64,000 nucleotides of DNA from Mytilus edulis (GCF_963676685.1 NC_092348.1:95728001-95792000), one strand, 5' to 3'. Shown: positions 16,496 through 41,429, counted from the stretch's first letter. Notes: generated by a model from the sequence alone, not told the origin. Program-made: numbers and translations.

Positions 16496-19400
16496 TCACA
16501 GCTTGGATCCTTTACTTGAGAAAAATCCCATTATAGCATTCATACATTCATCCGACTGCCACCGTTCCATTAGTATAACACATTCGTGCTTGTTCACTTG
16601 ATATAATTTGTCTTTCTCCAGTTCTCTCGACACTAATTTGCATTTTTGTAAACTCTGAAATCAAAAAGTAAATGCTACTTTTATAACTGCTTACACAATT
16701 TTATTTAATCTATCTTTTTATGTTTATATAATTATGAGTAATGGTGGGTTCATGGTTTAAAAAGCCAATTTATTTCATCTAACAAGAATAATGATTAAAG
16801 TAGAAATGTTTATGAACACAAATAAGTAAACATAGTTAAATAAAAAATCAATAATTCTAGGAGCCTAGATTATTCTTTGATGGCCTTTATGTGTAATTCA
16901 GTCAATAAAATTAGCCAATTTTTATAATATTTTCAATTAGACAAAAATTCTTATAATTTTATGAGCATGTGAAGTGTTTACTAAAATACAGAAATTTGAA
17001 CCCTTATTTTATGTCATAACTTACTATTATTTATTCAGATTACAGAAATACCAATTAGGCATAGAAAATTACAAAATAAATCTAAAATGTGTCTCCATGG
17101 ACACAGATCATGATGCTCCTGCATTGCATACACCATTTTAAAGGGACACAACTCAAGAATGATAAAAGTGAGGCTACCCAAATTTGTACTTGAACTGAGT
17201 TTTGTGGTAATAAGTATTGTGTAAAAATTTCATAATGTTTGGTTGGGGCAAACTTATGTTACAGAACGGAAACTAAACATTTTGCAATTTTTCAAGTTAT
17301 AATGAGGCATAACTCGATAATGGTTAAAGTGACACTTCCCCAATTCAGCTTTATCTGCGTTTTGTGGTAATAAGTATTGTGCATAAGTTTTGTAAAATTT
17401 GGTTGAGGCAACTTAAGTCAGAGAACGGTTACTAAAAATTTTGCACCTATATCCTTTTATAAAGGGGCACAACTCGAGAATGGTTAAAGTGACCCCACCA
17501 AAATTCAAACTTGATCTGAGTTTTGTGGTAATAAGCATTGTGTATAAGTTTCATAACATTTGGTCGAGGCCAACTTAAGTTCGAGAGCCTCTAAAAATTT
17601 GTAATTTTTCCATTTATTAAGGGCATTACTCTAGAAAGGATTGAGTGATGCCACCGAATTCAAACTTGATCTGTAATTTGTGATAATAAATATTGTGCAT
17701 AAGTATCAACATTTGGTTGAGGCCAACTTAAGTTAGAGAATGAAAACTAAACATTTTGCATTTATTTCCATGTATAAAGGGGCATAACTCTAGAACGGTT
17801 AAAGTGACACCACCAAACTTCAAACTTGATCTGTATTTTGTGGTTATAAGCATTGTGTATAAGTTTCAGAACATTTGGGAGAGGCAAACTGAAGTTAGAG
17901 AAGAGAGGGAAACCCAAAAATGCAGCAATTTTCCATTATAAAGGGGCATAACTCTACAACGGTTATAGTGACACCACCAATTTTTAAATTTGATCTGTGT
18001 TTTGTGGTTATAAGTATTTTGTATAAGTTTCATAACATTTGGTAGAAGCTAACTCAAGTTAGAGAACAGAAACCGATTTTGGGATGTACCAACGTACGTA
18101 CATATGTATAGTCCGACAAGGGTAAAACTTAATGGCCCCTCTGCTATGGTGGGGGCACAAAAATGAAAAATGCTGGAAATCATATTTGCGACCTTCATAA
18201 CATGTAAGTATGACCATTGTGAGGATTTTTTTTATTTCAAAAACTGAACATTGATCAATGATCCATTATATGAAGTCAAGCTCTGATGAAATCTGCCAGA
18301 CAACACCTTGTAGTTATTCAAAAGGTGATCTACTGCTTCTAGTACTGAAGAAGCAAACCAAATCACAAAAGGTTAACCCTGACCATTTAACCTTGAAATG
18401 AAGTCAAGATCAGGTGACCTTCATCAGATGCACATATTGACCATGCAGGGATCCTATCAACCACACACAGTTATCCTTTTACTCTTAACAAGTGAGAAAT
18501 TAATGTGACAAAAAAACTATACATGTTTTTTAAGCAGTCTCTCATATGTTGTTTAGTTGTTTAGACATTTACATATGCTTCAAAACATCGATTTATTAAA
18601 TGTCATTTTTCATAAACTGTTGACACAGAGATATGTTTGAATGTCCACATAATATTCAGAACTAGAGGCTCTTAAGAAACTGTGTCGCTCACCTTGGTCT
18701 ATGTGCATATTAAACAAAGGACACAGATGGATTCATGACAAAATTGTGTTTTGGTGATGGTGATGTGTTTGTAGATCTTACTTTACTGAACATTCTTGCT
18801 TCTTACAATTATCTCAATTTATAATGAACCTGGCCCATTAGTTACAGAGGAAAATATTTTATTAAAATTTACAAAAATTTACAAAATTTACACAATTATT
18901 AAAAATTGACTATAAAGAGCAATAACTCCTTAAGGGGTCAACTGACCTTTTTGGTCATTTGACTTATTTGTGGATGTTACTTTGCTGAACATTATTGCTG
19001 TTTACAGTTTATATCTATCTATAATAATATTCAAGATAATAACCAAAAACAGCAAAATTTCCTTAAAAATTTCCAATTCAGAGGCAGCAACCCAACAACC
19101 AGTTGTCCGATTCATCTGAAAATTTCAGGGCAGATAGATCTTTACCTGATAAACAATTTTACCCCATCTCAGATTTGCCCTTAATGCTTTGGTTTCAGAG
19201 TTATAAGCCAAAATCTACATTTTACCCCTATGTTCTATTTTTAGCTGGGTCACGCCACATATTTTTTAAACAAGATACCCCAATGATGATTGTGGCCAAG
19301 TTTGGTTTAATTTGGCCCAGTAGTTTCAGAGGAGAAGATTTTTGTAAAAGCTAACCCTGGACGACAATGACGACGCCGGAGGACGCCGGACCCAAAGTGA

Positions 19401-22400
19401 TGAGAAAAGCTCACTTGGCCCAAGGGCCAAGTGAGCTAAAAAACAATCTGATGAACAACAACATTGCTCATCAATTCAAAGTCACTGGACCTTTTGGGCA
19501 GGGCCTAGAAGTGGTCGACAAATTGATATCTTCTGATAGTAATGCAACTTTATAAAAATATCACAATTGGATCCTATTAAACCAACTGAATCAGAAAATT
19601 TAACATTGAAAATTGCTTATTAATTCAAAGTCACTGGACCATGCCTAAGGGAGCAGGGTCTCAAAATAGTCATTAAACTGATATGTATTGATAGTTATGC
19701 AATTTCCCATCAAATAAGTATGATCTATCACAAGTAGTTCCTACCAAAATAACTCAAGCAGAAAACTTAACTCTTAATGATGCCACTGCTGTCTGCAAAA
19801 AGCTATTTCTATGTTTCGCTTTCCGCGACATTCATTCCAGGCTGGACAACTAAAAGGGGCATAACTCAAGAATGATAAAAGTGACGCTACCAAAATTCAA
19901 ACTTAATATGTGTTTTGTGGTAATAAGCATTCTGTGTAGATTTTATACCATTTGGTAATAAGCATTCTGTGTAGATTTTATACCATTTGGTAATAAGCAT
20001 TCTGTGTAGATTTTATACCATTTGGTAATAAGCATTCTGTGTAGATTTTATACCATTTGGTAATAAGCATTCTGTGTAGATTTTATACCATTTGGTAATA
20101 AGCATTCTGTGTAGATTTTATACCATTTGGTAATAAGCATTCTGTGTAGATTTTATACCATTTAGTTGTGGCAAACTGAAGAAATAGAATCCCACGGAAA
20201 CAAAAGATTCCTCAATTATTCAAATTGTAAAGGGGCATAACTCTAAAACAGTGAATGTGATGCTACAAAAATTCAAACTTGATCTTCGTTTTGTGGTAAT
20301 AAGCATTGCATATATATATGAGTTTCTTCATTTGGGTGAGGAAAACAAAAATAAGAGAACAAATACCAATTTTGATGTACTGATGGAAGTACAGACAGAC
20401 AAAGGTAAACTTTAAAGCTCCCTTCACTACGGTGGGAGCATGAAAATAAGGGTTCCCTATCTTTTTACAAAAAACTTATACTCTAGGTCAGTAACTTGGA
20501 GCTTTAAAGGACACTAACAAATGATTCAATTAGTAAACAAGTAATTTCAGATGTGGAATTGCAAAGAGGATTCAGTTGAGTTTCAAAACACCTTACTCAA
20601 CATCAGAAATTAAATATATTTTCAAGGATTTTTTTTTCAAATTTCAAGGGCAATTTTAGACTTGGAATAACTGAAATAATAATTCTAGTCTTTTTTCAAA
20701 TTTTCAAAGTAGGGTATGAATATTGCCAACTATTTGTCCATATATAACTTACTATTTTGGGCAGCTTTGCATATTGCTGTACTCTTGCTTCTGTTTCTCT
20801 CTGGAATACATCATTAGGGAAGACTTCACTCACAAGATTTCTATCACACGCCTCCTGAGCAGTAATCTTCTTGTTAAACAATAACATTTCACTAGCCTGA
20901 AAATAAAAGAGTGTTTCTTACTGACATTCCTTTATCTAAAATTAATATACAAGTATAATAAACTATAGGTATAGAAAACATTTTCAAAATATAATTCTTT
21001 TGAAAAAAGAGCCATATTGGACTTCATCAGATCAAATAAACAAAATATAAAAAAACTTCTGACAAAAACTTTTCTTGTTTTGCTTGATTTCGTTATATTT
21101 TATTCTTGATAATAAAAATCAAATACAATTTCCCTTTCCTCTGACAGTTAAACATCTTATTAACGAAATAGAAGTCAACAGATGGTAAAAAATGTATCTT
21201 TCATAAGTCAACTTTCCTGTGTTTTGTCTGTATATTTTGTCTAAAATTTGTGTGTTTATGCTATTTAGTATTTTACATGTTAACTATCATTTTGTGTTTG
21301 TATACTGTCAGTGTGAGAAAAAAATCAACAGTGAATAATATAAAATTGTTTTCTGTGTTATATTAGAATTGAATAGAATATGAATTTTATCTTAACCAAG
21401 GTCAAGTTTTTCTTAATCAATGTTACTTCCTGTCAAATCAGTTTTAATCTACCAAAAACATGGTACTCGTTTTCTTTACAGATTTAACTAAATAGTTTAA
21501 TTTTCTGTAGCTTCATTTATAAAACATTTATTGATTATCTCCCTTTATGAAACAAGGATGTAAAATTTGAATCTATAATACATTTCATTTTTGTGTAAAA
21601 CAACAAAAGATTAAATTGCTATTACATGGCAGAATGTATAAGTTGATGGGCAATGAAACTGCAAATGATTTAACAGTATAACATGAACCGATTTAACAGT
21701 TAGAACATGCCAACAGGAAGCCTGATTACAAGTTTTGAAAATATTTGATTTGTAGATCCTTAGAAAATTGTGACCAAAATTTCACATTTTTTGGAATAAG
21801 GAATTAAATTTATATACACATATTTACCTTAGCTGTTCCCATTAACTTTGGGAATACATAGGATGAGCAGCCCTCTGGTGATTGTCCTAGCTGTGAGAAT
21901 GGAGTGTGAAATGTGGCCTAAAATTATATACAAAACCAGTTGTACATTCTTGCTCGGAAAGTTTTTGTTTCAATTAGATCTGAGTTTGCGTCTTTGTTGT
22001 TTAGCCTGAAGTTATCTTAAATAAGATTTGATTCTGTTTGATTTAAAATAAACAGAATACATGGATGATACATATTAAACTAGAGAAAGCTAGAAAAAAC
22101 TTACATGTCAGCAAGTGCCAGACAAAGAGACTGATGCATATAAAGCAAATGCTCATAAATAGTCAATTTTGACACCAGAAATTGATCCAGGATGTGTTTT
22201 CCATTAATATTGTATATCTTTTGTTAAAATCCAAGCACTAGGACTAGTATTTTGAAAGGTATCGTTTGTAAATGGTGGGCAACCAATAATTATGACACAG
22301 AGAACCTTTTACATTAAATATGATTATTACAATTTATCATTTTTCAAGAAATACTAAGTTTTTAACACAATTTTGACTAGAGTACACAATTTGAAATGCA

Positions 22401-25400
22401 TATGAATATCAGTTTTTGTTAAAATCCTATTGAAAGAAGATTTTCTTTCTCAGAATTTATGATTTTTTTTAATAAAAAACAAAGCTTTTCCAAAACTTAA
22501 ATAGATTGTTTCACCTCAATATAGTATGACATTAATATATTATGCACAACATTTAGAGTAAAATTTCCTACCTATACATTTGTAGTTTTTGCATTTACGA
22601 AAATGTTTGGTAAGGGACAGTTAACTATAGTGCTCCCGTTCCCAGATGCAGGGTCCTTATAACTATCTAATAATCAATAATCCCCCCTCCGTTACAATGG
22701 GGGCATAAAAAAGGTAGGAAATTGTAAAATTTAACTTATAAATTATTTAGTGTGATCAATAAAATAAATCTTCCCACACTATACTTTCAATGGCAAAGGG
22801 GAATGTGTTAAAGAGACCATAACCGGAACAAAGAGTAGAAAACAGCCAAAGGCCACCTATGGGTAAAGCATGGTTTAGTCCTACCTTATCTGAAGCATAC
22901 ACAACATCAAAAAGTCCCAAGACAGTAACAGAAACACCCACTGCTGGTCCATTGATTAGTCCAATTAATGGCTTAGGGAAGTCTATAAAAGCATTCACAA
23001 ATTTCCTGGAAAAATAACATACATATCACTTAGAAACAGTGTAACATAACTTAGGAATTAAAAAGGGTAGTGGTTTTCATTTAACTAGACGAAAAGATGC
23101 TCTACAATATTAAACAATATACTTTGTTACCATTTTTTTCTAATTTTAAAATTAAACAAATCATTAGTCATATTTTAAATAAATTATAAAGTCTTCATAC
23201 AAACCTATAGAAAAATTTGTCATTCATTGAACATTTAAATTCATGGTTCACCTGTACCTATGAAATCCACAAAAATTGGTATCCAACAAAAAATGATGAA
23301 TTCACACTACTTTTACATTTTTGAATGAATTTCTTACTACATCTGTACAAGGAATGATATTCCATTTTAGTTAATCAAGCTGCCATTTTCTCAAATCGAA
23401 ACCTACTCTAATATGTCGCCTCCTTGTTTCGCCATAGCTCCAATGCCATCTGATGGGATGTTCATGAAGTTACTTAAATCATTGCCACTACAATAATAAT
23501 CGCCGGCACCTACAACATAAAATACACAATGTTTAAACATGTGGTTTATCAAAATATATTAAACTGGTAGAAAACTCTTTTAAATGCATAATAAATAAGA
23601 AAAAAATAATTCTACCTCTGCATTAAGTGTGATGCGATATTTCCCCTCTCCAGACAGTTACAATTTCGTGGCTTGCCAAGCTTTTTAAATATTTGAAATT
23701 GAACTGATGAGAGTGGAGAAATTTTGTATTGTACAATAATTCATGATAGAATCAGTTTCTCCAATCGAATGATTTTTATATGATATTTAGGCAAACTTAT
23801 TCACTGATCAGCAAAAAGATGTGTTGTTTATATGTGCATCATAAGGCATGGTCATCTTTTTCATGGCCTCCAAATAGAATTTTCAGTGAACAGCAAGAAA
23901 ATTTTATATCATTATTAAATATTACCAAATAAGAATGGAGTTCAAACGAAACATACTTTGATTAGAAATATTACAACTGTTAATATATATACATTTTGTA
24001 TTACTAGTCACTTACAGTTGATCCTGATCCAGTCTGACTGAATATAGAATTACTGTAGACAAAAAGAAAAATATTTATACCTGTCAAAACAGCTAATGTA
24101 CAGTTTTTATCGTTTGCTGCTTCGGACAAAGCAAGGCCTACTTCTTCATACATCTGTTAATATAATCAATGTTTGTTAATGTCATGATTTAAAAAAAATA
24201 GTTTCTTGTGTAAGGCTGTTACCTTATAACATATGGTGCCACAGAATTTGTTTCTATTGAAATATCTCTTAAAATTTATGTTATTCTTCCATTATCCTGT
24301 GTTGTAGTTAAGGATGTTAATATAAGCTTTAAATGGGAATGTCTAAATGACATGAATCAGTCTCATCAGTTATAAAATATCATTTGCCCTGAGTAATGGT
24401 AGCTATTCCTCTAAGGCTGAAAGAGCTGATCCATAATAATACTGGAAGGCATCACCATGGCACCATTTCATCAGTATATTGTCCTAACAGACCATGTTAC
24501 TGAAGAGTAATAGGTGATAATTGAAGGAATGAATGAATGGATGAATTAGTGTTGTTCCATTTACAGTACTGATGACCATGGCAGACTGAGTCTCTAGATA
24601 AGACTAATGGTGGTTCAAACTGAATTTGGTATCAGAGAAAGTCTTACAAAAAGTTTTGTGGTTAACAAATGAAATGTAAACAAAAAGTGGTTGAAATAGA
24701 TAAAGATCACATGAAGTTTTTTTTATATCAACTAAGAAAGGATTAAATGTATGCTTTATTGTTTATGTTCAGACAATTTTGTCACTGCTTTAATGGAGTG
24801 CTACTTAAGTTAAGTTAAACTTAACCTTATAATTGATGGCATTTTTCTTTGCTGGTCTGTTCAGTGTAATTTTAAAGATACCATCATTCAATGTAACAGC
24901 GACAGTTTCATACTTTCCAGCTGATTCTGTAGAAGACACTGATGCTTGAGATGGACTATCTTCACCTGCCAAGCTATGTACTAAATCTATATAGGCCTTC
25001 TGTGCTTCATCCTGTGTAACATTATAGTATCATTAAATTTTATTGTAATAGCATTATTCTGGAAATGAATGAATCAATTAACTATTTTTAATTTTGGTTT
25101 TCCAACTTTTTTGATTCATGCAATACTGATGAGTCTTATGAAAAGAAACAGATGTCCAACATTCTAAATCAAAAGCCATCTTGGATGAACATTTATATCA
25201 TTAAAGACTTCCATTAAAAATATTAAACAGCTGGGTCAATGTTCGCAATTGTTTCTCCATAGGCGATAATGGTAACGTTTTCTACTGTTGCTCAGTCCAT
25301 ATCGTTAACTTGTGTATGATGGCTCGTTTCAAAGCCGAGACATTTTCACATATGTGGTTAAATTTTAAGGGTAAGAAGTGAAATTACTTTTATCGTAAAT

Positions 25401-28400
25401 TATCAAACCCTGAGAATCCTTTTGTGATGCGGCTCCTCATGGAAAAACATCTCTTTTTAAACACAATAGGTTCTTTGAAAATTTAATACTTTGAACACAT
25501 TTAAAAGCTCCATAGTTTTAACACATTTATTCTATGTTCCCCTACTTTCTAAATCAACACAAATAGTTAAGCTCAATCACTTGTTTATCATAGAAACGTG
25601 TCAAATATCACTACACAGAGATTTTTTGTTTACACACAACTTTTGAGTTCCTCATTTTGAGGTGCATTAGGGATATTGACCTAGCTATTTTCTCTCCGAC
25701 AATAATACCAGTATCATTGCCTTTCGAACGTTTATAACTACCATAGTGATTGTCGTTTGTTGCTGTATTACATATTTGTTTTTCGTTTATTTTTGTATAC
25801 ATTAATTAGGCCGTTAATTTTCTGGTTTAAATTGTTTTGCATTTGTGATTTCTGGGCCTTTTATAGCTGACTATGAGATATGGGCTTTGCTCATTGTTGA
25901 ATGCAAAACAGTGACATATAGCTGTTCATTTCTGTGTCATTTGGTCTCTTCTGGACAGTTGTCTCATCCACTATCATACCACATCTTCTTTTTATATATA
26001 CAGCTGATTTTTTCACTTCAATCTTACCTGTGTCATATCACTCAGATTGTTCCATGCATCCCATTTAGCTTTACCAACAAAATCCATCATGCCTGGTTTT
26101 TTAACATTACACTTTCCTATTGTTGCCTTATAGAAAAAGAAAAAAAGAAATAATTTTAATTGATGTACATGTATTACTATAAAAGGATGTGTAATAGATT
26201 AAAACACTTGACATTAAAAAACTGCTAAAATAGATAAATATATTTATTTATGGAAGTACACAGCCCTCTACTTGAGTTATATAAATTCTGACAAAGTTAG
26301 TTGACAAACGTGTTTCTTTTCTGTATACCATTACCAAGTTTTAAATGAAGTTTACAAGTTCAGTTTAACAAGCTTTACAGTAGACACAACAAACTTATAC
26401 AGTGGGTTTTTTATTTCATTTTTCTTGTACTGGGTTGTGATAAGATATGACATATGACAACAACTGTTGGATGAGATGAGGTTCCTGACTTGGTAGTCAG
26501 TGTTTCCATATTGACTTGATTTATAACAGATATGTACTTCAGCTATAAATTTCTCCATTGATAATGTTTCATTTGCATGTGTGTATCATCTTGTCCACCC
26601 AAAAACCACTTATCATCATGAATGTTAATTGGAACAAATATGCTAAGCAATTGAGAACATGAATTCAAATTTAGTTAACCCTTTTTTACTAGGTTGACTG
26701 TTTCTTACATTTGGATTGAGACAAAGTTGAACTTACATGGGTTAGGCTAACTTACATGGGTTAGGCTAACTTACATGATGGGTTAGGCAAACTTACATGG
26801 GTGAGGCTAACTTACATGGGTGAGGCTAACTTACATGGGTTAGGCTAACTTACATGGTTTAGGCTAACTTACATGGGTGAGGCCAACTTACATGGGTGAG
26901 GCCAACATACATGGGTGAGGCTAACTTACATGGGTGAGGCTAACTTACATGGGTGAGGCTAACTTACATGGATTAGGCTAACTTACATGGGTTAGGCCAA
27001 CTTACATGGGTGAGGCTAACTTACATGGGTGAGGCTAACTTATATGGGTGAGGCTAACTTACATGGGTTAGGCTAACTTACATGGGTTAGGCTAACTAAC
27101 ATGAGTTAGGCTAACTTACATGGGTTAGGCTAGAACTTACATGGGTTAGGCTAAAACTTACATGGGTTAGGCTAACTTACATAGGTGAGGCTAACTTACA
27201 TGGATGAGGCTAACTTACATGGGTTAGGCTAACTTACATGGGTTAGGCTAACTTACATGGGTTAGGCTAACTTACATGGGTTAAGCTAACTTACAAGGGT
27301 GAGGCTTACTTACATGGGTGAGGTTAACTTACATGGGTTAGGCTATTCTTTTTAGGTCCTTTTTAGTCATACCGATAAATTTTAAAGCAAACATTTATTA
27401 GAACATGTCAATATCACTGCATGTCGACCAACAGGCTCTGATGCTATGATCATTAGCTTAGTATTCAGTGCTTCACATATGATTTATAACTTACCTTATC
27501 TAAAACAGTTGAATAATTAACAAAATTTTAAGAAACAGAGGTTCAAACTTCCTCATGCAAAGTTAACCTTACCTGGATTTGCTTAATCTTTTTAGGTCCT
27601 TTTCCGTCATATAACTCATCGAGTAAAGTAATTGTACATCCTTGGCTTTAACAAATTTTTGGTTTACGCATTATTAATGTCAGAATGAATATAATAACAA
27701 GAATGTGTTCATAGTACATGGAAGCTCCACTCATACTATCATTTCCTATGTGGATCGTGAAATTGAGGTCAAAACACTAATTTGGCATTTAAATTAGAAA
27801 GATCATATCATAGGGAACATGTGTACCGGTACTAAGTTTCAAGTTGATAGGACTTCAACTTTATCAAAAACTACTTTGACCAAAAACTTTAACTTAAAGC
27901 AGGGCAGATAGACAAAACCAACGGACCAACAAACAAACAGACGCATAGACTGAAAAATAAATAATGCCCCTAAGTGATGCATAAAAAGTACTTTGGACGC
28001 AAAAAATTTATGAAGCGTTATTTTCATTTTTAAGAGGACACCAATGTCCCATTAAGACAAATTGAAGAAAGATTTATGCTGCCTGGATGTAGATCTGCCT
28101 ATGAATTAATTATTTTACCTCTCTCCCTTGTTCACTTACCTGTTTAAATAAAGCATAAATTGTTAGTTTGACATCATTGCCAGGTTCATTCTGGAGAGTG
28201 TTCAATTGAACTTTTGCTTTCTCAAACTCTGCATCCATAGCCCCTAGGACTGGCCTTGATCTATGAAATCCTCTTGTTGGCATAAAATGTACACTACAAG
28301 AAAATGGTTTAATTTAAGAATCAATATTTTATCTGTTGTTTTCTATAACATCTACCATTAAAATGTAAATTTCAAAATATATATAATCGACAAAAAGTCA

Positions 28401-31400: not shown

Positions 31401-32416
31401 TACTGACAAGAGGTTATCTCAGTACATAGAACCTCCAGTTATGGTAAAAGATCCTTTAGATTTGAGGCAGCACAAGTATGGAACTCACTTCCTAATGAGG
31501 CTCGACTCATGACTTCTTTTGACCAGTTTAGGAATTATATAAATTCCTGGTGTGGGGGTCAAAAATGTTACTGCAGTTCATGTCGTTTCCACCCAGTGCT
31601 GTCTCAAAGCTGAAATTTCTTTCTTTCTTTTTATAATGGCCTTTTGCTCTGCTTTTTATGCATTTTTATGCATTTTTTTTTTTTTTAATATATCTGCCAT
31701 TAAATGCTAGTGCTTATATTTATTTATTTATTGTTTTCATGCTTTTAGTCTGTTATATTTTATGATCCCAAGTGATTTGCTGATTCCCCCGTTTCAATGC
31801 ACATAGAGGCGCTTGCCACATGAACTTTGACTCTGGAGACTCACAAATCAAATAGAGTTGCTTTCATTATATTGCATGTTTTTTTAGTTTTATTTGGTAG
31901 TATTTGCATGATGCTGCATGTTTTTTATGTGATAGTCGGTTAAAGAGCTCACCAGAGCTCATGTTTTCTCTGTTATTGTGTATATATATGCCGACTCTAA
32001 ATAAAATTTACTTACTTACTTACTTACTTACTTACATGTACCTCACTATACTTCAAGTACTTGTCACTGTCAGTATTAACTTTATACCAATCAGGTTCAA
32101 AATATAAATCAATAATCAGTTTGCAAGTCAAAAATTTATATTTCCTTTGTCGTTATATGAAGATAAATCGGTGTTATAACATAAGGTCTTAACCTTCCTT
32201 TATACCTGGTGAGAAAGTGGACTTTGATCAGAAACTGAGAAAGAGTAAACTTTTTCAATAGTAACATGTAGTTGAAAAGGGTTATGAAACTTAAGATTAT
32301 AATTCTTATAAAAATAATTGTGATGTACTCATAAAAGTCTTATCATTTCCTCATTAAACTAACTTCTTGAAGGTGAAAATATGATTTTGAAAAGTCCTCC
32401 TTATGGAGGCAGCCAT
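16496..32416 (-). CDS. ECI2: Enoyl-CoA delta isomerase 2 (ACBP + crotonase domains), 10 exons, 393 aa
   Basis: GT-AG exons, all phase-consistent: 32364-32416, 28140-28293, 26028-26126, 24826-25011, 24081-24153, 23407-23509, 22885-23005, 21828-21917, 20753-20896, 16496-16654 (1182 nt). ACBP motifs [12 protein letters not shown] and GKAKWDAW. Crotonase motifs [41 protein letters not shown]-terminal SKL. AATAAA about 25 nt after the stop. Confidence 0.95.
17085..18162 (+). mobile_element. Helentron/HINE-like element with about 6 internal tandem units of about 160 bp
   Basis: Repeated aaggggcataactc...aaacttgatctg..ttttgtggtaataagcattgtgtataagtttc. 3' hairpin gcccctctgctatggtgggggc plus A tract. 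Related copies at 19855-20447 and, reversed, about 33280-33568. Confidence 0.65.
18661..19443 (+). mobile_element. Non-autonomous Helentron-type element
   Basis: Starts actagaggctc...gtcgctcacc and ends with a perfect hairpin agctcacttggcccaagggccaagtgagct followed by A tract. Confidence 0.7.
19919..20163. repeat. 35-bp minisatellite, 7 identical copies, inside a Helentron-like unit
   Basis: Unit ggtaataagcattctgtgtagattttataccattt. Confidence 0.95.
26730..27344. repeat. 19-bp minisatellite, about 32 copies, in ECI2 intron 2
   Basis: Unit aacttacatgggt(t/g)aggct. Confidence 0.95.
28447..30412. mobile_element. Non-autonomous DNA transposon, PIF/Harbinger-like
   Basis: Imperfect TIRs of about 40 bp (ggcttaaattaaaatattgtttgtttgcagtttac / aaaactgcaaacaaacatatttttaaggttggcc) with a 3-bp TGA duplication at 28444-28446 and 30413-30415. 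Confidence 0.7.
31428..32036 (+). mobile_element. 5'-truncated LINE (CR1/L2-group-like): ORF2 C-terminus, 3' UTR and (TTAC)n tail
   Basis: 31428-31613 translates [26 protein letters not shown]...CYCSSCR...*, a typical LINE ORF2 end. AATAAA followed by (ttac)n at about 32000-32036. Confidence 0.75.
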
Positions 32417-32453
32417 TTTCAAACAACCGCGCCACCTATCGACCATAATCCCA
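32417..32453. promoter_or_regulatory. 37-bp spacer between the divergent ECI2 and CDYL start codons; core of a putative bidirectional promoter
   Basis: CAT at 32414-32416 and ATG at 32454-32456 each splice in frame to a downstream exon. Start contexts are GAAAATGGCTGCC (minus) and CCAATGGCGG (plus), resembling YY1/TISU-type motifs. Confidence 0.75.
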
Positions 32454-35400
32454 ATGGCGGAAAACGAAGTTTACGAGGTAAAAAAAAACCTGAGATCTTT
32501 ATAAACAACCAATTTTGGAACGCATATGACAAGTTAAGGAGATAGATATGTTTTCTACATGATCAATTTAAAGCAAGACTAGTAAATCTGCATAAAGATT
32601 TTTTTTCTTTTTATGTTTCAGCTGTCAGTTTTGAAAAAGGTTCATCCAATTACCTAAAATAAACCGGTAGCTACACCAGTCTTATGTAACATTATTTACT
32701 TAGAGATAAAGTTTTGTATGAATATTAGAAGAAAAAATAAGGCTTTAAAAAATTTTGTTTTTAGAACTTCTAATTATCCTGTAACTTCTTCATATTTTAG
32801 TCTAATAATTATCTTTTATGAACAAGTTGCTAATTATTTTTTATATCAAATAAATTTGTAAGTTAACAGAATATCCCTTATTCTGTTATTTGATAGTTGT
32901 GTCATTATATGAATTTTGTCATGAAATGACCTTAGATCCGTCTCTGAAGAATTGTCATTTAAAATGTATCGATACCTTATTAAAAAAAAGAAATGGTATG
33001 AATGGTATGGAAAATTTTGCGGGAATATTTTTATTTTATTAGTGAATAATTTTTATCAATAAAATTTTGAAATTTATGTTCTATTTAACCTTTGAAATTT
33101 CTTTATAAAAGTACATCATTTATGTACATGTAAATCAATAAAAGAGCTTCAACGCATAAACTCACATGTTTTCATTTATTCTTCAAATGTATTGTTATAA
33201 TTTTTAACCTTCTATGAAATAACTGAATTTTTTCCTGATAAATATCATGTATTTGATGGTTCTGCGATCCCAAATATTTTTATGCTCCTGGCTGCTGTAG
33301 CAGAGGGGGTGCATTCAGTTTTACCCTTGTCCCTCCGTTGGTTTCTGTACTCTAACTTCTAACTCTTGTACATTAGCCACAACCAACTGTTATGAAATTT
33401 GATTGCTGATTAATATTTCAAAAAAAAGATCAAGTTGTTTTTTTAGGGGGTGTCACTTTTATTGTTCTAGAGTGGTTCTAAAGTTCCTCTTTACACATAG
33501 AAAATTTGTTGATTTTTTTTCGTTTATGATATCTGACGTTAGTTTGCCTCAACCAAATGCTATGAAACCGGTACCTCGAATGACCGAATAACACTGTTAA
33601 TATGCGAATAACACTTTTGTGACGGAATAACACTTGAAATATTAATATTAGCACATATTTGTGACTTTTAAACATTGATTATTAAATAATAATATATTAT
33701 CGATGTATTTTATAACTAAAAATTGATTTACAGAAAGCAGATAAGTTCATCAAGATCTTTTTAAATTTAGTATGTGCATCCAACATGGTGACCACGGAAA
33801 TCAAAATGGCCGCCATGTTGGAAACCTTCAATTTCTGGGTTATGTATGTTAAAATGTTCTATGTTCCGATATATGCGTGAGATGTCTGTCATTGGACATT
33901 ATCCAAATATCATCATCCTATGCATGTATTGTTACAAGACGGGGGTGTTATAAAAGTAACGGTATTTTTACAAAGTTAACACACTGGTTACTATATTCTG
34001 GGTAAATTCTACTATAGAGCTGTCAACTCTGGTGTCGAGTTACAAACTAAGTTATACTGGTAGCGTAGCTGGCAAAATGGTCAAAGCACTGGTCTAAATA
34101 AGGTAGCTCAGCCTCAGAAACTTATTAACATTGACTTACTTACTTCATGTACAACAGATAACAACATCAAATTAAGCTTTACAATTTATTATATACAAAA
34201 CATTCAATACTATAACAAGCATAAACCACATAAAAACCCACCAGAGCACTTAATAAAATATACAGAGACCCCCCTTTTTGGTAAGTTATTCGTTTGTCAA
34301 CAACGTAGTAAAAACGTATTTGGTTTGCTCTGGTAATTTCTTTGGTATCAGGAGTGACTGCCCTGGTAGCGGCCTGCAGGCCATCTGAAGACTGTTGTGC
34401 ACTCGCTTTTATACATCTGTCCCACCAACGTCTCGTGCCCCTATGGAGAAATTACGTTATGCTAATTGGATGCTGATCTCAGGTCATTAGGTCAATGACG
34501 TCAATAAAAAATAGTGATGCAAATGGCGCCGATCGAAACGTTGACACTCTGTCGAGTCAGGAAATGGACAAACGGAACTTATCTAAGCTTACTCTAAGCA
34601 TGTATGGGCCCCGGTTACAATATTCATGACTGCCTTACACTAATAAGATAACAAGGTACAAATGTAATAAAGGGGTAAAGTGTGAAATAAGGGAAACCAG
34701 AAGGTGGGAACAGTTGTTCAGTCAGGGGACCCCCATGGTCGAACAGTGAAGACGAACTCTATATTATTATTCCCAGAGACCTTACTAACAATATTTACAT
34801 CCAATTACAATATATAAGTCTTCACAATGTTCATCAAATGTCTGTATACGAGTTGGCTAACAGTAAACGAAGAACGTGAAAATACTCTTTTGTTCCGACG
34901 TTGGAAAGTTCCAGGCGGAAAGAACTAGCTAGCCGAAAAGTTCCGGAGGAACTTATTAACTAGTTACTTTGTTCAAAGTGACAAGTTGAAAAGTTCCAAC
35001 GTAACATATCAACTAGTTAGAAAGTTCCTATTTCCCAAATTAGTCAAAACCGGAACTAACAAACTAGCCCAAAAGTTCCAACGGAACTTATCAACCCGTC
35101 ACAAAGTTCCATTTGGAGAATTGATGCAAAGTAAAAGCACAACATATTATATTAGAACCTTTCAAAGGGGAACCAAGATACTGATTACAAAAGTCAAAAG
35201 GAACTAGTCACAAAGTTCCTCTTTGACAAATTAGTCAAAACCGGAACTAACAAACTAGCCCAAAAGTTCCTCCTCATTTGGATACTTTTAAAAATATCAA
35301 TTTCAGATTAATGTATAACAATAAATTAGAACTTTTTCCGTTATTAAGGCAACATTCTGACCGAATAAACTAGTTTTTCTGTTCCACCAGAACTATTCAA

Positions 35401-38400
35401 CTAGCTACATTGTTCCGGGACTTTTCAACTAGCTACTTTTTTCAGGAACTTTTTGACTGCACTCGGAATAAAACAACTAGTTGGAAAGTTCCATCGTAAC
35501 AAAATAACTAGTTGAAAAGTTCCGCCAGAACAAAGTAACTGACGGAACATAGCGGCTGTTACATGTTTACTGAGTATATATGTATAGCCCGAAAGAGTCG
35601 TATGTACAAACCTACAGCTTACTCCCTACACTGTAACAGTATCATACTTTACTTACACAAAACTATGATTTTTCCAAGAAAATTGACAATAATAATTGCA
35701 GTAACTTGACTATATCATGTTTATTATATATTCAATTTTCTAATTTTAGCTCTGGTATTAATTAAATTGTTTTAAATCGGAAAATACATTTAGGGCTAAA
35801 TATAAATTATTGATTTTTTAGGTGGAAAACATATTGGAACAGAGAGAGGTTGATGGACAACTGCAGTTTTTTGTCAAGTGGAAGAATTTCAATGAAGACT
35901 GGAATACCTGGGAACCAGTAGACAATTTGTTGGATTGTTTTAACTTAATCCTTGAATTTCAGGAAAAGCAACATGATACTGTTACTACCAAAACAAATGT
36001 TGAAAAGTCAAAACTGGCTAGAAAAGAGGCATTAAAGATTGTGAAGAAAGCCAAGAGATTGAACTCTGGTAGTGATAATATTAAGAAAGCTTTACTGAAG
36101 CATGCAGCTATTGTTAAAAATGAGGATGTTAGCCTTAACCTATCAGTGGACACAAGCGTGCTTACTTCTACCCCATTTAAGAAGTCACCTAAATCACCTA
36201 AGTCACCTAAATCACCTAAGTCACCAAAATCACCAACACAATCACCAAAATGTTCACCTAAACCCAGAAAGTTGGAAGAAGGGGTATCAACACCTATTAC
36301 TACAACTAAAAGGACTCCAAAGAAACCTTCCAAACTTGAAGAGTATTTTGATCCATCAAAAATGTTTATTAAAAGTTCTAGTAAAATATTGTCAAATGGT
36401 GTTCAGAGTTCAAAGGTTAACTCTCCAAGTGTTTTAAGAACTTTACTTACCACTAGCCTCCCTGTTCCTACGAAACAAAGTAAAATTAACAGTCCTTGTA
36501 TGCATGCTAGTGTAAAACTGAAGAAATGCACAGTGAGTTCAGTGACATTAAACAGTAGCAAAACCACAGATGCATTGCAAAGTGACAAAGAAAGTGACCA
36601 AATAACTCAGAATAAATCTGATAACTCTCAGAGTAGTACAAAAATAAAAAGAAAATACACAAAAAGATCAGATCAGGAATTACTGGGAGGAAATAAAAAG
36701 AAAACCTCTAAAGTTGGAAACAAAACTAAAAGTACAAGTTTGAAGAATAATCTTAAGAAATCGCTAGGAGGTAAAACTTTAAAAACATCAGATAAAAACT
36801 TTAAAATGAAGAAAACAGGGAATTTGTTGGTAGTTAAAATGAGACCAGCTATCAAAAAGGAAAAGAAAAGTGAATTAAGTGCTTCAAGTCAGAGCGAGTG
36901 TTCTGAAGCTGAAACAAAAGATATAACTTTACAAGATATGAATAACAGTGCTGCACAGGAAAAAGTCCACACAGAGATTCAGGCTTCTCAAGGAGAGAAG
37001 AAAATTGTGAAGAAAAAAATTATATCATTGAAAGTAAAGAAAGAAAAGTTAAACAAAGAAGGCAAAAAGAAAGAGAAAAAAATCAAAACAAAAGATCAGG
37101 CAGATGGGAAAAAAATAAAGAAACAAAATATGAATGAAGGGAAAAAAGTGAAAGTGAAAAAGAAAAACAAAGAAGATGGGAAGAAAGAAATAAAAGTAAA
37201 AGGAGTAAAGAGGAAGTTGGAAGATTGTATTGAAATCATAGACACTGAGTCTGATGATGATGTTCAAGTCAAATTTTCTTTATCTCCAAAATCTAAGAAA
37301 GCTAAAACTGACAATTCACCAAAAAGACCAGAAAATGAGAAAAAGATGGAGAGTCCTAGCAAGATAATAAAAGAAATGGGTAAAAAGACTCTGCAGGTGA
37401 AAGTTCGTCCAATGGAAACGACATCATCCAATATAAAGAAGATGAGATTAATTGATGCAGTAAAACCTCACCCTGGAGTCTCAAAATCAGGTACATGTAC
37501 AGTAAAACCTCACTCTGGTGTCTCAAAAATCAGGTACAGTAAAACCTCGCCATAGTCTCAAAATTAGGCACAATTATAAAAACTCCCTGAAGTCTCAAAA
37601 TCAGGTACAGTAAAACCTCACCCTAGAGTCTCATAATCAGGCACAGTGAAAACTCTCCCTGGAGTCTCAAAATCAGGTACAGTAAAACCTCACCCTGGAG
37701 TCTTAAAATTAGGTTCAGCAAAACCTCACTCTGGAGTCTCAAAATCAGGTACAGTAAAACCTCACCCTGAGGTCTTAAAATCAGGTACAGTAAAACCTCA
37801 CCCTGGAGTCTCAAAATCAGGCACAGTAAAACCTCATCCTGGAGTCTCAAAATCAGGTATACAACCTTTTTGTATCAAGTTGATACATACAGCTGACATA
37901 TAGATTCTGTTAAAATAAGTAAAAGATGTTTCGACAATGTTTTTCCTTATAATTAGATGTACATATCTTAGAGTCATGATAGAACTTATTAGGAGAGTCA
38001 TTTGAATGGCTTTAATATCCATGATCCTGATGATGAAACATTTCAAATTTTTATCATATTGATAACACAACTAAGGCTCATACATTTAGAGCATTCTAAA
38101 GGAATATAAAAAAAAATACAAAAAGATTTATGCTGCTTTCTTATATCTGATGCTGAATTGCACCAAGCTGTTGGAAATATTGTCATGATATTTACATCAT
38201 AGTCTAGCATTTTGTTTTTCTGTACTTTCTAAATAATTTTGTTATGCTTGCAGATATTAGCTGATCTTTAGGATTTTTGTTTTCTTTTTCTTAATATATT
38301 TTAAACTTTATTATTTTATATTTACAGCAATTGTTCGACCAGTATCACCAACTCCTGTGTTCACATCAGTCAAGCCTATAATGTCTACTACACATGCTCG

Positions 38401-41400
38401 ACCCATGGTTGCCATGGATGCACTTTGTGCAGATGTACCTGCAGGGTATCACTATGTACCCGCTATGATTCCTATCAGTCCTTCATCAATGTCATACAAA
38501 ATGTTACTTGATAGTCTCCCTTTCCAGTTTCACACGAAGAAGTCCAGCAAGAAACGAGAAGAAGAAATGGTGCGTGAAGATGATGTGGAACGGAGAATGA
38601 GTGTTAGACAAAGTGAATGTGCCTACCGATATAAAGAGATTGTTGTGAAGAAGTGTAACCGATATACACAGATCTGGTTAAATACACATTCAAAGTTAAA
38701 AAATTGTCTTAATCCTCAGGTAAATATATTTCTTTAAATTGGTATAAGAGGAGTTTGGTGGTAGATGAAGATATTTTTTATTCTTAATAGCTCTCATCAT
38801 TTCTTTCCACATACTAAATCTTTTTCTTACGGAATAGAATTTGTTAATTTTTCCCGCATTTCTGAATAAATGTCAATGTATTACATCATAATGTTGTATT
38901 AGTTATGTATTGTTGCTTTTATTTAATACCATCAATAATACATAATTTTTCATCTGTATTATATTGATGTAGACTTTGAAATTGACCGCATATGTTGCCA
39001 GCAATCTAATACGCATATGTTATATAAAAATAAGGAGATGGGATATGGTTTCCAATGAGATAACTACCCACCAAAGTTCAAATGAAGGTGATGTGAGCAG
39101 TTGTAGGCAGTCATACAGCCTTTATGTATGAATGTCTTGTTCTATGTTTTAGGTAATACAAGAAGTAGTGTCAGCTTTGAACTCAGCGAAGTATGACGAT
39201 AGTAATCTAGTCATGTTCAGTGGTCTAGGGAATGTGTTCTGCAGTGGTATCGATCTCACTTACTTGATCTCAAATTCAATGGATAGGAAAATGGCAGCAA
39301 GAAAAATGGTGGATGCTCTCAGGTAAACATAATCATAGCCACATATGAATAAAAAGGATGTGCCTCACCCTGTATTATTTGTCTCTGTTTATTGTCCTTT
39401 CACTTTACTAATTTACTTGAACGTTTAATCAAACTAAATATAAACTCATCTCTACAAACTGAGCAATTGGTAAAATATTTCATTTCATTGATTAAGTGAA
39501 AGGTAATCATTATGAAGTAGATGCAGTGAAATAAAAGGTATTCTTAATCTTAGCACATAATTTCGAAGTTTGTCTGAAGATTGTGCAGAGTTATGGTCCT
39601 TGGACTTAACTGAAGTCACTTAAATAATCAGTTTTTAACTATTCTTTCGTCATGCTTGAAGATATTGACTTGATATTTGATATATAGTTGACACCATGAC
39701 AAGTTGTAGATCAAGTTAAAATTTTGTTCCAAAACAGTGAATTTTTAACCAGTAGGGACTATGTATTGCCATGCAATACTCACAGTATGCTTGTTACTAA
39801 AATGTATTAGTTATTTGCCTAAAATTTTCTTTTAGGGATTTTATGAAAGCTCTCATCACATTTCCCAAACCTTTGATAGCTGTAGTGACGGGATCTGCTA
39901 TAGGTCTTGGGATGACCATGCTCCCGCTATGTGACATAGTCTACGCCAGCGATAAAGCTTCATTCCATTTACCATACTCGCAGCTGTCACAAACACCAGA
40001 AGGATGTGCGTCATTTCTCTTACCTACCACAGTTGGAATGGCCATGGTTAGTATTGTTTACAGTTACATACAAGAAGATACTTTATAAAAACTGAATGTT
40101 GTTACAGAAAAAATTTAACTAATAATTGGTGTTTATCAGTATTCACTGATGTTCCAATAAAATATGTACCATACTGAGAGGAGGCACTTTTAAATTGTTG
40201 CAATAATCGCTCAATCACAATTTCAAAATTTTTATTTTCTTCTGTTTGTGTTTTTTTATGAACTGCATCTTTAGAAAATATGCATGATTGATGTGTATCA
40301 AAAGTGTTTAAATTTGACGTTCTTGATATCTTGAATGTAATGCTAAAATATTCCCATTATTATAGGCTAATGAATTACTGATTGGAGGACGGAAGATCAC
40401 AGCTATTGAGGCGTGTCAACTTGGTCTGGTATCACAGGTGTTCTGGCCTACCAGTATCATGCAAGAAGTCATACCTAGAATAGAAAACATGGCCCTACAG
40501 TCAGGCAAGGTAAACAAAATATGTGCTTCTTTAGGGAGGGTCAACTGTGTAGGTGAAAACACTGTTTTTACACATGATAAGCTGAATAACAACTCATATA
40601 TAAATTTTAAAAAAATACTATGGAAAATTGCTCAAGTATGCCACCAATTTGAACTATTTTGGAATATTATAGGAAAATCAAATATAAAGTTTTTGAATTG
40701 AAAAAATACTGAAAAATGGAAATTTTTATTTTCCAGTTGCATACATTTATCTAAGCTTTTAGAATATAATAAAACCCAATTTAAGTTAAAAGAAATAGTA
40801 TTGTTTTGCTGTACATAACTACCACTTTTCTAAAAAAAAAAAAAAAGTATTTATTTTTATTGAAAAATCTTAATTTTTCATTTGTCACAATAAACAACCA
40901 TGGTTTTGAGAGTTATTTCCCCTTCCAAACATACTTCTTTAGATCAGAAAAATAATTCCTGTCTCATTTCATTGTATCAGTGTAGAAAAAGAAGAAGATT
41001 GAACATGTTATGCAATATTGACAAATCTGATGTATAAGAAAGAAATAAATGTTTGTCTTTTCAAAACAAATCAACGAGTTAAAAATCATCAATTACATTT
41101 TAAAAACACTAACCATAGAAAAAGCCACTTCAGAGCATCATTCTGGTGGCAGACTCTGTACTAAGGAGAAATCTCAATCTTTAGTACTTGATGTAATTGA
41201 TGATTTTTAAATCGTTGATTTATAGCAGATCATTGATATGGACTTATAATACAATCTTTCTTTTCAGGCTTTAGAGACAACCAAACTATTGATTCGAAGT
41301 CACCAGAGAACAAAAATAGAACTAACCAATGAATCGGAGTGTAATCTGTTATTGGAGAGATGGCCATCAACAGAATGTCAGAAGGCAATAGAGAATTATC

Positions 41401-41429
41401 TTAACAATGATAACAACTTCTGTATATGA
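32454..41429 (+). CDS. CDYL: Chromodomain Y-like protein (chromodomain, long Lys/Ser-rich linker, crotonase-like domain), 7 exons, 923 aa
   Basis: Exons 32454-32477 (MAENEVYE), 35822-37490, 38328-38719, 39153-39322, 39836-40046, 40366-40509, 41268-41429 (2772 nt), all phase-consistent. Chromodomain YEVENI...FFVKWKNF...NTWEP. CDY-family segment VRQSECAYRYKEIVVKK. Crotonase motifs FCSGIDL, FPKPLIAVV, QTPEGC. Confidence 0.9.
33570..35562. mobile_element. Transposon fragment in CDYL intron 1 with subterminal aactagt..aaaagttcc arrays, ending TGTTACA
   Basis: Higher GC than the flanks. Many direct and inverted aaagttcc/ggaacttt motifs in 34895-35550. Only one terminus is recognisable. Confidence 0.4.
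37459..37860 (+). repeat. 36-bp tandem repeat (about 11 copies) across the CDYL exon 2 / intron 2 junction
   Basis: Unit gtaaaacctcaccctggagtctcaaaatcaggtaca (VKPHPGVSKSGT). Confidence 0.92.
41068..41221. mobile_element. MITE-like inverted repeat in the last CDYL intron
   Basis: aaatcaacgagttaaaaatcatcaattacat ... atgtaattgatgatttttaaatcgttgattt. Confidence 0.65.

What the first reader, a model, noticed from the sequence alone, without database searches (positions are those of the whole stretch)
16496..41429. CDYL appears to sit beside its parent gene: four of four crotonase introns shared with ECI2
Seen: introns fall at aligned positions and phases. NAINYK|MYEE versus NCLNPQ|VIQE (phase 0). 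[15 protein letters not shown] versus ALR/DFMKALITFPKP (phase 2). MGTAK|ASEML versus VGMAM|ANELL (phase 0). LPKI|SLQK versus QSGK|ALET (phase 0). Exon sizes also match: 144 versus 144 nt, and 121+90 versus 211 nt. ECI2 has two additional introns. Inference: CDYL arose by inverted DNA-level duplication of ECI2 with ACBP replaced by a chromodomain. From memory, human ECI2 and CDYL are also divergent neighbours on 6p25. If so the linkage would predate the protostome-deuterostome split, and CDYL, mostly studied in vertebrates, would be pan-bilaterian.
Basis: partly seen in the sequence, partly recalled or inferred. Interest (0 to 1): 0.85.

Follow-up and report, generated by a model that had tools for sequence, protein, structure and literature searches.

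The report
CDYL and ECI2: ancient neighbouring paralogs
In this mussel genome the chromatin-reader gene CDYL sits head to head with the fatty-acid enzyme gene ECI2 and shares all four introns of its enzyme-like domain with it; this shows that CDYL arose as a DNA-level copy of an ECI2-type gene, a relationship already published, though the preserved neighbourhood seems not to have been described.

Summary
ECI2 (minus strand) and a 923-aa CDYL (plus strand) are real, expressed, divergent genes. All four introns in the CDYL crotonase region fall at the same alignment column and phase as ECI2 introns. Exon sizes match as stated: 144 vs 144 nt, and 211 vs 121+90 nt. RNA junctions confirm every CDYL splice site. 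The ECI2 model is 100% identical to a Mytilus edulis RefSeq protein.

Both genes extend beyond the given coordinates. Their first coding exons meet at 32,446/32,454, so the start codons lie 7 bp apart.

The mussel CDYL domain groups with vertebrate CDYL, not with mollusc ECI2 (support 100/99; AU p 5.6e-34). An independent fusion is therefore rejected. Four other crotonase genes in this genome lack the intron site that could be tested in all of them.

Adjacency also holds in vertebrates:
- pig and human gene order is PRPF4B-ECI2-CDYL-RPP40;
- one frog has consecutive locus tags;
- the two genes share a contig in 22 of 25 vertebrate species (almost all tetrapods).

The novelty is modest. PECI/CDYL paralogy dated to early animals (2009), fly HIPP1 as the CDYL homolog with shared splice junctions (2018), and RefSeq mollusc CDYL entries already exist. 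The conserved head-to-head linkage appears unreported.

The parts
32364..32446 (-). ECI2 coding exon 1. Presequence-like: [27 protein letters not shown], with a second in-frame Met at 32416. Donor AA|GTTAGT.
   Evidence: tblastn of P0418 (M. edulis ECI2 isoform X1) and direct reading
28140..28293 (-). ECI2 coding exon 2: end of the presequence and first half of the ACBP domain.
   Evidence: Pfam ACBP 2.5e-06; acceptor read; identical to P0418
26028..26126 (-). ECI2 coding exon 3: second part of the ACBP domain.
24826..25011 (-). ECI2 coding exon 4: linker and start of the crotonase domain. Ends NAINYK|gt, phase 0 (shared intron a).
24081..24153 (-). ECI2 coding exon 5, 73 nt. Followed by an ECI2-only intron, phase 1.
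23407..23509 (-). ECI2 coding exon 6, 103 nt. Ends ILE/, phase 2 (shared intron b).
22885..23005 (-). ECI2 coding exon 7, 121 nt. Followed by an ECI2-only intron, phase 0.
21828..21917 (-). ECI2 coding exon 8, 90 nt. Carries the SPEGCSS motif. Ends MGTAK|, phase 0 (shared intron c).
20753..20896 (-). ECI2 coding exon 9, 144 nt. Ends LPKI|, phase 0 (shared intron d).
16496..16654 (-). ECI2 last coding exon. Ends ...GSKL plus stop, a peroxisomal PTS1-type tripeptide.
32447..32453 (.). Seven bases between the two divergent start codons. The 5' ends of the two mRNAs must overlap here.
   Evidence: The CDYL RNA contig carries 41 letters upstream of the 35820 junction, so it reaches about 32435.
32454..32477 (+). 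CDYL coding exon 1 (MAENEVYE). Holds the first aromatic-cage Tyr of the chromodomain.
   Evidence: Loose ends of 81 raw reads and two contigs before 35820 match here
35822..37490 (+). CDYL exon 2: rest of the chromodomain and a long Lys/Ser/Pro-rich linker.
   Evidence: Pfam Chromo 2.7e-12; junction 37490>38328 seen in RNA
38328..38719 (+). CDYL exon 3: linker and start of the crotonase domain (AYRYKEIVVKK...). Ends NCLNPQ|, phase 0 (shared intron a).
39153..39322 (+). CDYL exon 4, 170 nt. Ends ALR/, phase 2 (shared intron b).
39836..40046 (+). CDYL exon 5, 211 nt. Carries LPLCD and TPEGCAS. Ends VGMAM|, phase 0 (shared intron c).
40366..40509 (+). CDYL exon 6, 144 nt. Carries the GLVSQVFWP motif. 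Ends QSGK|, phase 0 (shared intron d).
41268..41429 (+). CDYL last coding exon with stop codon.

Best explanation
The window, probably Mytilus edulis or a sibling species, carries two divergently transcribed paralogs.

ECI2 encodes a presequence, an ACBP domain, a crotonase-fold delta3,delta2-enoyl-CoA isomerase domain and a C-terminal SKL. This is the usual animal enzyme of unsaturated fatty-acid beta-oxidation, with a layout expected for mitochondrial and peroxisomal targeting.

CDYL encodes an N-terminal HP1-like chromodomain with an intact Tyr/Trp/Phe cage, a linker of about 600 aa of low complexity, and a C-terminal crotonase-fold domain. It is the orthologue of vertebrate CDYL/CDYL2 and of fly HIPP1. 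By inference it is a nuclear methyl-lysine reader whose crotonase domain binds or hydrates short acyl-CoA and oligomerises.

The CDYL crotonase domain descends from an ECI2-type gene by an ancient DNA-level duplication, at or before the base of Bilateria. The duplication kept the parental introns. The two copies have stayed neighbours in the mussel (start codons 7 bp apart) and in vertebrates (hundreds of kb apart).

Shown here: the gene models, the shared introns, the orthology, and adjacency in the mussel and in vertebrates. Inferred: that the copy was inverted at birth, how the chromodomain replaced ACBP, and the biochemical activities.
For: Gene models. All borders are GT..AG. Every CDYL junction inside the stretch laid is seen in RNA contigs and in stranded raw reads. 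The ECI2 model is 100% identical to RefSeq P0418.

Shared introns. Four of four fall in the same alignment column and phase. Exon sizes are 144=144 and 211=121+90.

Conservation of the 211-nt exon. Single-exon ORF fragments from other animals start and end at the same two residues. Of 24 CDYL-type fragments with at least 10 unaligned residues upstream, 14 start at CDYL aa 752. The same exon is undivided in several ECI2-type fragments. By best hit these fragments resemble vertebrate CDYL and CDYL2, arthropod, mollusc and cnidarian-like ECI2 genes.

Specificity. Exons of four other crotonase genes in this genome run straight across site c, and one also across site b.

Orthology. The CDYL/ECI2 split has 100/99 support and AU p 5.6e-34. 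Exon 6 scores 46.6 bits to human CDYL against 25.6 to human ECI2, and shares GLVSQVFWP. The LPLCD motif is shared with human CDYL. The N-terminal MA..YEVE chromodomain start is shared from molluscs to mouse.

Single copies. Only this CDYL and this ECI2 match CDYL exon 5 in the 1.37-Gb genome.

Linkage elsewhere. Pig coordinates, human gene order, consecutive frog locus tags and a shared contig in 22 of 25 vertebrate species, almost all tetrapods, and a shared chromosome in Pinctada and Saccostrea.

Literature. PECI/CDYL is listed as a paralog pair that duplicated before the divergence of animals (PMC3091328). Fly Hipp1 and mouse Cdyl share three splice junctions (PMC6385973).
Against: - Direct adjacency is shown in only two deep lineages, a bivalve and vertebrates. 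The other two bivalves show only a shared chromosome.
- Orientation in vertebrates was not checked with tools.
- The tree has no named non-animal outgroup, and the CDYL stem is long (0.5). Neither the direction (ECI2 to CDYL) nor the date of the duplication is therefore shown by the tree alone.
- Cnidarian ECI2 groups with bilaterian ECI2 and not with CDYL. The split may thus predate Bilateria, but no cnidarian CDYL was identified.
- The most conserved exon of mussel CDYL scores higher to human ECI2 (75 bits) than to human CDYL (67 bits). I take this to reflect slow ECI2 evolution, not kinship.
- The mussel chromodomain is closer to HP1 (54.7 bits) than to human CDYL chromodomains (about 30 bits).
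- The taxa of the single-exon fragments are inferred from best hits only.
Confidence: 0.85

Rival explanations
1. Independent, mollusc-lineage fusion. A local recent copy of the mussel's own ECI2 acquired a chromodomain, so the gene only mimics vertebrate CDYL.
For: The genes are adjacent. The central exon is slightly closer to human ECI2 than to human CDYL. The catalytic-type Glu of ECI2 is retained. The chromodomain is HP1-like.
Against: The two window domains are only 39% identical. The tree puts mussel CDYL with vertebrate CDYL at 100/99. A mollusc CDYL plus mollusc ECI2 clade is rejected: delta lnL 230.6, AU p 5.6e-34. CDYL-only motifs are shared with human CDYL.
Confidence: 0.01
2. RNA-mediated (retroposed) origin of the CDYL crotonase domain, with introns gained later.
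For: CDY on the human Y chromosome arose from CDYL by retroposition (established knowledge), so the family has used this route.
Against: Four of four introns lie at parental positions and phases. This is not expected from later independent gains: naive chance is 3e-9, and four other crotonase paralogs lack site c.
Confidence: 0.01
3. The duplication is real, but the present adjacency is secondary or coincidental. The copies were dispersed and came to lie side by side independently in bivalves and in vertebrates.
For: Only two deep lineages show direct adjacency. The distances differ greatly: 7 bp between start codons here, about 0.4 Mb in pig. No echinoderm, amphioxus or arthropod data were obtained.
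Against: Immediate neighbourhood of the same two paralogs in two phyla is very unlikely by chance. Tandem or inverted birth followed by retention is the simpler history. In pig and human nothing is listed between them.
Confidence: 0.1
4. The shared introns are ancient introns of the whole crotonase superfamily and say nothing specific about an ECI2-CDYL relationship.
For: A Pfam scan of the genome hints that one paralog (C2:89.86 Mb) has an exon starting near profile position 81, close to site b.
Against: In a profile-anchored comparison the four fetched paralogs have exons running across site c, and one across site b. ECI2 and CDYL are each other's closest structures and sequences.
Confidence: 0.03

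Closest known systems
Vertebrate CDYL / CDYL2 (and primate CDY)
   Same: N-terminal chromodomain starting MA..YEVE. C-terminal crotonase fold. Motifs AYRY(K/R)(E/D)IVV, LPLCD and GLVSQVFWP. Same clade in the tree.
   Different: The mussel protein is 923 aa against about 540-600 aa, because of a long low-complexity linker. It keeps Glu in the (S/T)PEGC motif where human CDYL has Asp. Its chromodomain scores higher to HP1 than to human CDYL. Its gene lies 7 bp from ECI2, not hundreds of kb.
[quoted passage not shown]
   Same: Protostome member of the CDYL clade. Arthropod HIPP1-like proteins fall in the same clade. The paper used shared splice junctions to argue homology: Hipp1 and Cdyl share three.
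   Different: HIPP1 and the arthropod proteins found here lack a recognisable chromodomain. The mussel gene keeps an intact one.
ECI2 / PECI (peroxisomal and mitochondrial delta3,delta2-enoyl-CoA isomerase with an ACBP domain)
   Same: The window's ECI2 has ACBP plus crotonase plus SKL. It is up to 63% identical to vertebrate ECI2 (sturgeon) and nests among bivalve ECI2.
   Different: It has two extra introns in the crotonase region. In several other animals the 211-nt exon appears undivided.
The PECI-CDYL paralog pair of Szklarczyk and Huynen 2009 (PMC3091328, Table 2)
   Same: The same two gene families are treated as products of one duplication before the divergence of animals.
   Different: That work rests on protein trees. 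It does not report shared introns, physical adjacency or the head-to-head arrangement.

Membership tests
CDYL family | N-terminal chromodomain | tested here: met
   Pfam Chromo, 2.7e-12, 46.9 bits against a cut-off of 25.1
CDYL family | Aromatic cage residues for methyl-lysine binding | tested here: met
   The alignment to CBX5 shows Trp and Phe in VKWKNF. The Tyr lies in exon 1, MAENEVYE, and aligns with the Y of YEVE in other CDYLs.
CDYL family | C-terminal crotonase (ECH) fold domain on the same polypeptide | tested here: met
   ECH_1, 4.9e-14. One transcript contig joins the chromodomain exon to all crotonase exons.
CDYL family | Groups with vertebrate CDYL rather than with ECI2 in a domain tree | tested here: met
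   Split supported 100/99. The alternative is rejected at AU p 5.6e-34.
CDYL family | Binding of H3K9me3/H3K27me3, crotonyl-CoA hydratase activity and co-repressor activity | not testable with these tools
   These need peptide-binding and enzyme assays.
ECI2 (PECI) | ACBP domain fused N-terminally to a crotonase domain | tested here: met
   The half-domain exon scores ACBP 28.0 bits against a cut-off of 28.3. The identical full protein P0418 carries PF00887 plus PF00378.
ECI2 (PECI) | C-terminal PTS1 tripeptide | tested here: met
   The protein ends GSKL.
ECI2 (PECI) | Glu of the SPEGCSS motif, taken from general knowledge as the catalytic base of this isomerase type | tested here: met
   GQSPEGCSS is identical to human ECI2 in the alignments. 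That this Glu is catalytic was not tested here.
ECI2 (PECI) | Clade membership with animal ECI2 | tested here: met
   Nests among bivalve ECI2 (100/95) inside a cnidarian-plus-bilaterian ECI2 clade supported 99/94.
Bidirectional (head-to-head) gene pair with a shared promoter | Divergent transcription start sites within about 1 kb | tested here: met
   The ATGs are 7 bp apart. CDYL RNA reaches about 32435, inside ECI2 coding exon 1. The ECI2 transcription start itself was not mapped.
Bidirectional (head-to-head) gene pair with a shared promoter | Co-regulated expression of the two genes | not tested

The most novel reading that the evidence does not exclude
The head-to-head arrangement, with start codons 7 bp apart and mRNA 5' ends overlapping, is the preserved birth configuration of an inverted duplication more than 550 million years old. 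It still works as one bidirectional promoter. That promoter co-regulates a fatty-acid beta-oxidation isomerase and a chromatin reader with an acyl-CoA-binding fold, which would link acyl-CoA metabolism to histone acylation in invertebrates. The same linkage survives in stretched form at human 6p25.
Probability: 0.15. Interest if true: 0.6.

Novelty: new member of a known kind. Interest (0 to 1): 0.4.

Why it matters
The finding gives gene-structure proof of how a chromatin regulator was built from a metabolic enzyme gene. CDYL's catalytic-fold domain is a DNA-level copy of an ECI2-type gene, and the two genes are still neighbours in a mussel and in mammals. That makes ECI2-CDYL a small, datable case of a paralog pair kept in linkage since before the protostome-deuterostome split. 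It also offers an invertebrate CDYL with an intact chromodomain and the ECI2-type Glu, useful for asking which activity (isomerase, hydratase or only CoA binding) was ancestral. It does not change what is known about the family's age or membership.

Tried and rejected
The planned synteny and intron survey in Pecten, Saccostrea, Haliotis, Ptychodera, Patiria and Branchiostoma could therefore not be run. As proxies I used the 'longest_contig' values and locus tags printed by the search for homologous proteins, plus gene tables in two papers.
Database searches used single exons by reference. The joined translations were built only inside the closed script machine, from window.fa, for local BLAST, alignment and trees.
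- Aligning all ECI2 exons as separate rows to a full-length protein misplaced most fragments. Only four well-placed fragments were kept for the profile search (A4).
- The query backbone P0101 turned out to be nematode-like, so the hit list was half nematodes.
- Both protein-atlas runs returned only chordate CDYL clusters and did not settle whether cnidarians have CDYL. A paper search for CDYL with Nematostella found nothing.
- The flanks of the window hold C2H2 zinc-finger genes and no recognisable PRPF4B or RPP40 homolog. No extended synteny block was seen.
- The genome-wide Pfam scan was too coarse for exact intron comparison. I replaced it with a profile-anchored look at four fetched paralog loci.
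- Complex prediction, structure prediction and fold search were not used, because nothing in the claim depends on them.

Full report
WHAT IS THERE

The window is AT-rich animal DNA with 29-37% GC. Its genome has 1.37 Gb, and the window is C5:95.73-95.79 Mb.

On the minus strand lies ECI2. On the plus strand lies a chromodomain-plus-crotonase gene. Pfam finds Chromo (2.7e-12) and ECH_1 (4.9e-14) in plus-strand ORFs, and ACBP and ECH_1 in minus-strand ORFs. The central exons of both genes hit human ECI2 first among solved structures and human CDYL/CDY next.

GENE MODELS

Exon ends were found by mapping peptide ends onto DNA. All borders are GT..AG.

For CDYL, one read-laying run on 35500-41499 showed two transcript contigs (3115 and 2990 nt) and stranded raw RNA reads. 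They join 35822-37490, 38328-38719, 39153-39322, 39836-40046, 40366-40509 and 41268 onward, exactly at the predicted sites. Loose read ends before 35820 spell ...ATGGCGGAAAACGAAGTTTACG. This sequence lies at 32454-32477 followed by GT. The CDS therefore has seven exons and encodes 923 aa with no internal stop.

For ECI2, my nine-exon translation (372 aa) is 100% identical to residues 32-403 of P0418, NCBI 'enoyl-CoA delta isomerase 2-like isoform X1 [Mytilus edulis]', whose contig is 97.3 Mb long. The genome is thus M. edulis or a very close relative.

P0418 has one more 5' coding exon, at 32446-32364 on the minus strand, spliced to 28293. The two start codons, 32446 (-) and 32454 (+), are therefore 7 bp apart. 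The CDYL contig reaches about 32435, inside that ECI2 exon, so the two mRNAs overlap at their 5' ends.

THE OBSERVATION

The two crotonase domains align over 266 residues at 39% identity with three single-residue gaps. In a global alignment the four CDYL introns and six ECI2 introns were marked by column and phase. Columns 43 (phase 0), 101 (phase 2), 172 (phase 0) and 220 (phase 0) are shared. ECI2 alone has introns at column 67 (phase 1) and column 142 (phase 0).

Exon lengths are 144 vs 144, 211 vs 121+90, and 170 vs 73+103 nt. The naive probability of four exact coincidences is 3e-9.

IS THE SHARING SPECIFIC?

A Pfam scan of the whole genome lists exons of about eight other crotonase genes. 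I fetched four of them. I then compared their six-frame pieces with a profile built from the ECI2/CDYL domain alignment.

On that profile the ECI2/CDYL borders fall at positions 34, 91/92, 163/164 and 209/210. The paralogs' exons cover 151-182, 138-193, 142-184 and 152-205, all of which run across site c. One covers 77-126, which runs across site b. The tested sites are thus not general crotonase introns.

ARE THE SITES OLD?

The representative search with CDYL exon 5 returned many short 'proteins'. These are single exons read into their flanking introns. An example is ...CFR|DFVKAFIQF...GVAL|VRFSTS.

Of the CDYL-type fragments with at least 10 unaligned residues upstream, 14 of 24 start exactly at aa 752. 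Most of those with unaligned tails end at aa 822-824. ECI2-type fragments span aa 200-204 to 272 as one piece, without the Mytilus intron at 242.

By best hit, these fragments resemble vertebrate CDYL and CDYL2, arthropod HIPP1-like and mollusc CDYL, and vertebrate-, mollusc-, crinoid- and anemone-like ECI2. The taxa rest on best hits only. Sites b and c therefore look ancestral to both families, and the 121+90 split looks derived.

ORTHOLOGY

Named relatives were obtained from cluster look-ups and homolog lists.

A maximum-likelihood tree of the crotonase domain (64 rows, LG+C20+F+G4) separates two groups at 100/99:
- A CDYL side with mussel, seven other molluscs, a nemertean, echinoderms, Ptychodera, amphioxus, tunicates, hagfish to mouse, a trematode, and arthropod HIPP1-like proteins.
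- An ECI2 side, in which the window's ECI2 nests among bivalves. Sea-anemone ECI2 is sister to bilaterian ECI2 (99/94).

Holding mollusc CDYL and mollusc ECI2 together costs 230.6 log-likelihood units (AU p 5.6e-34).

Exon-by-exon PDB searches add CDYL-only signatures:
- Exon 6 scores 46.6 bits to human CDYL against 25.6 to ECI2, and shares GLVSQVFWP.
- The end of exon 3 matches only CDYL/CDY (AYRYKEIVVKK).
- LPLCD is shared with human CDYL.

All chromodomain-bearing members start MA..YEVE at residue 1, which argues for one ancestral fusion.

Two departures from human CDYL:
- The mussel keeps Glu in TPEGCAS where human CDYL has Asp.
- Its chromodomain is closer to HP1 than to human CDYL.

LINKAGE ELSEWHERE

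I used four proxies:
- A pig GWAS table gives PRPF4B at 2.38-2.41 Mb, ECI2 at 2.42-2.45 Mb, CDYL at 2.85-2.97 Mb and RPP40 at 2.99-3.01 Mb on SSC7 (PMC11639466).
- A human 6p25 OMIM list runs PRPF4B, ECI2, CDYL, RPP40 (PMC7479479).
- In Hymenochirus boettgeri the two proteins carry consecutive locus tags, GDO86_011284 (CDYL) and GDO86_011285 (ECI2).
- In 22 of 25 vertebrate species present in both hit lists (24 tetrapods and one sturgeon), the two proteins sit on a contig of identical length. The same holds in Pinctada imbricata and Saccostrea echinata.

Orientation in vertebrates was not verified.

In this genome only this CDYL and this ECI2 match CDYL exon 5.

WHAT WAS KNOWN

- Szklarczyk and Huynen 2009 list PECI/CDYL as paralogs that duplicated before the divergence of animals.
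- Glenn and Geyer 2018 call HIPP1 the fly CDYL homolog. They note that Hipp1 and Cdyl share three splice junctions, and that a fly PECI-like gene shares one with Cdyl.
- RefSeq already names mollusc, echinoderm and hemichordate proteins 'chromodomain Y-like protein 2'.
- Full-text searches for CDYL with ECI2 or PECI plus duplication, synteny or paralog found no paper describing the adjacency or the four shared introns.

The paralogy, its age and the protostome presence are therefore known. The conserved head-to-head linkage and the complete intron correspondence are, as far as I could search, additions.

VERDICT

The finding is real and correctly read. It is a well-supported case of an ancient DNA-level duplicate that has stayed beside its parent, in a new species.

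Open points:
- orientation and adjacency in more phyla;
- the root and the date of the duplication;
- whether the 7-bp head-to-head arrangement acts as a shared promoter.

Interest is moderate.

Noticed in passing
window 37458-37859: A 36-nt tandem repeat of 11 copies starts inside the end of CDYL exon 2. Each unit encodes about 12 aa (VKPHPGVSKSGT-like) and ends in CAG|GTA, the donor motif. Later copies could serve as in-frame alternative donors. RNA shows only the first copy (37490) in use.
   Followed up: partly
window 36182-36234: An 18-nt repeat encoding SPKSPK... in the CDYL linker. The transcript contig of run X2 lacks one 18-nt unit at 36182, a length polymorphism between samples or species.
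   Followed up: no
window 39500-39900 (CDYL intron 4): Run X2 contigs pile up here at depth 108-170, against about 20 on the exons, with many loose ends at 39646-39797. This is probably an expressed repeat or transposon fragment inside the intron.
   Followed up: no
window 17133-18073, 19918-20163, 26730-27345: ECI2 introns hold a 160-nt repeat of about 6 copies, a perfect 35-nt repeat of 7 copies, and a 19-nt repeat of 32 copies. The 160-nt unit recurs as dispersed copies (ORFs such as ...[23 protein letters not shown]).
   Followed up: no
window 53315-55567 (-) and 60259-62631 (+): Two C2H2 zinc-finger genes on opposite strands, evidently paralogs of each other. They share stretches such as YKCNVCGKEYNSKSNCHRHLK. 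No PRPF4B-like or RPP40-like gene was seen in the window.
   Followed up: no
G000:C1:123815837-123816472 (-): A crotonase match covering Pfam ECH_1 positions 23-232 in one open frame of 237 aa with no intron (128 bits). All other crotonase genes of this genome are split into exons. It could be a retrogene or a foreign insert.
   Followed up: no
window 32416 vs 32446 (-): ECI2 exon 1 has two in-frame Met codons ([17 protein letters not shown]...). The stretch from the second Met looks like a classic Arg-rich presequence without acidic residues. Alternative starts may give differently targeted isoforms, as in mammalian ECI2.
   Followed up: partly
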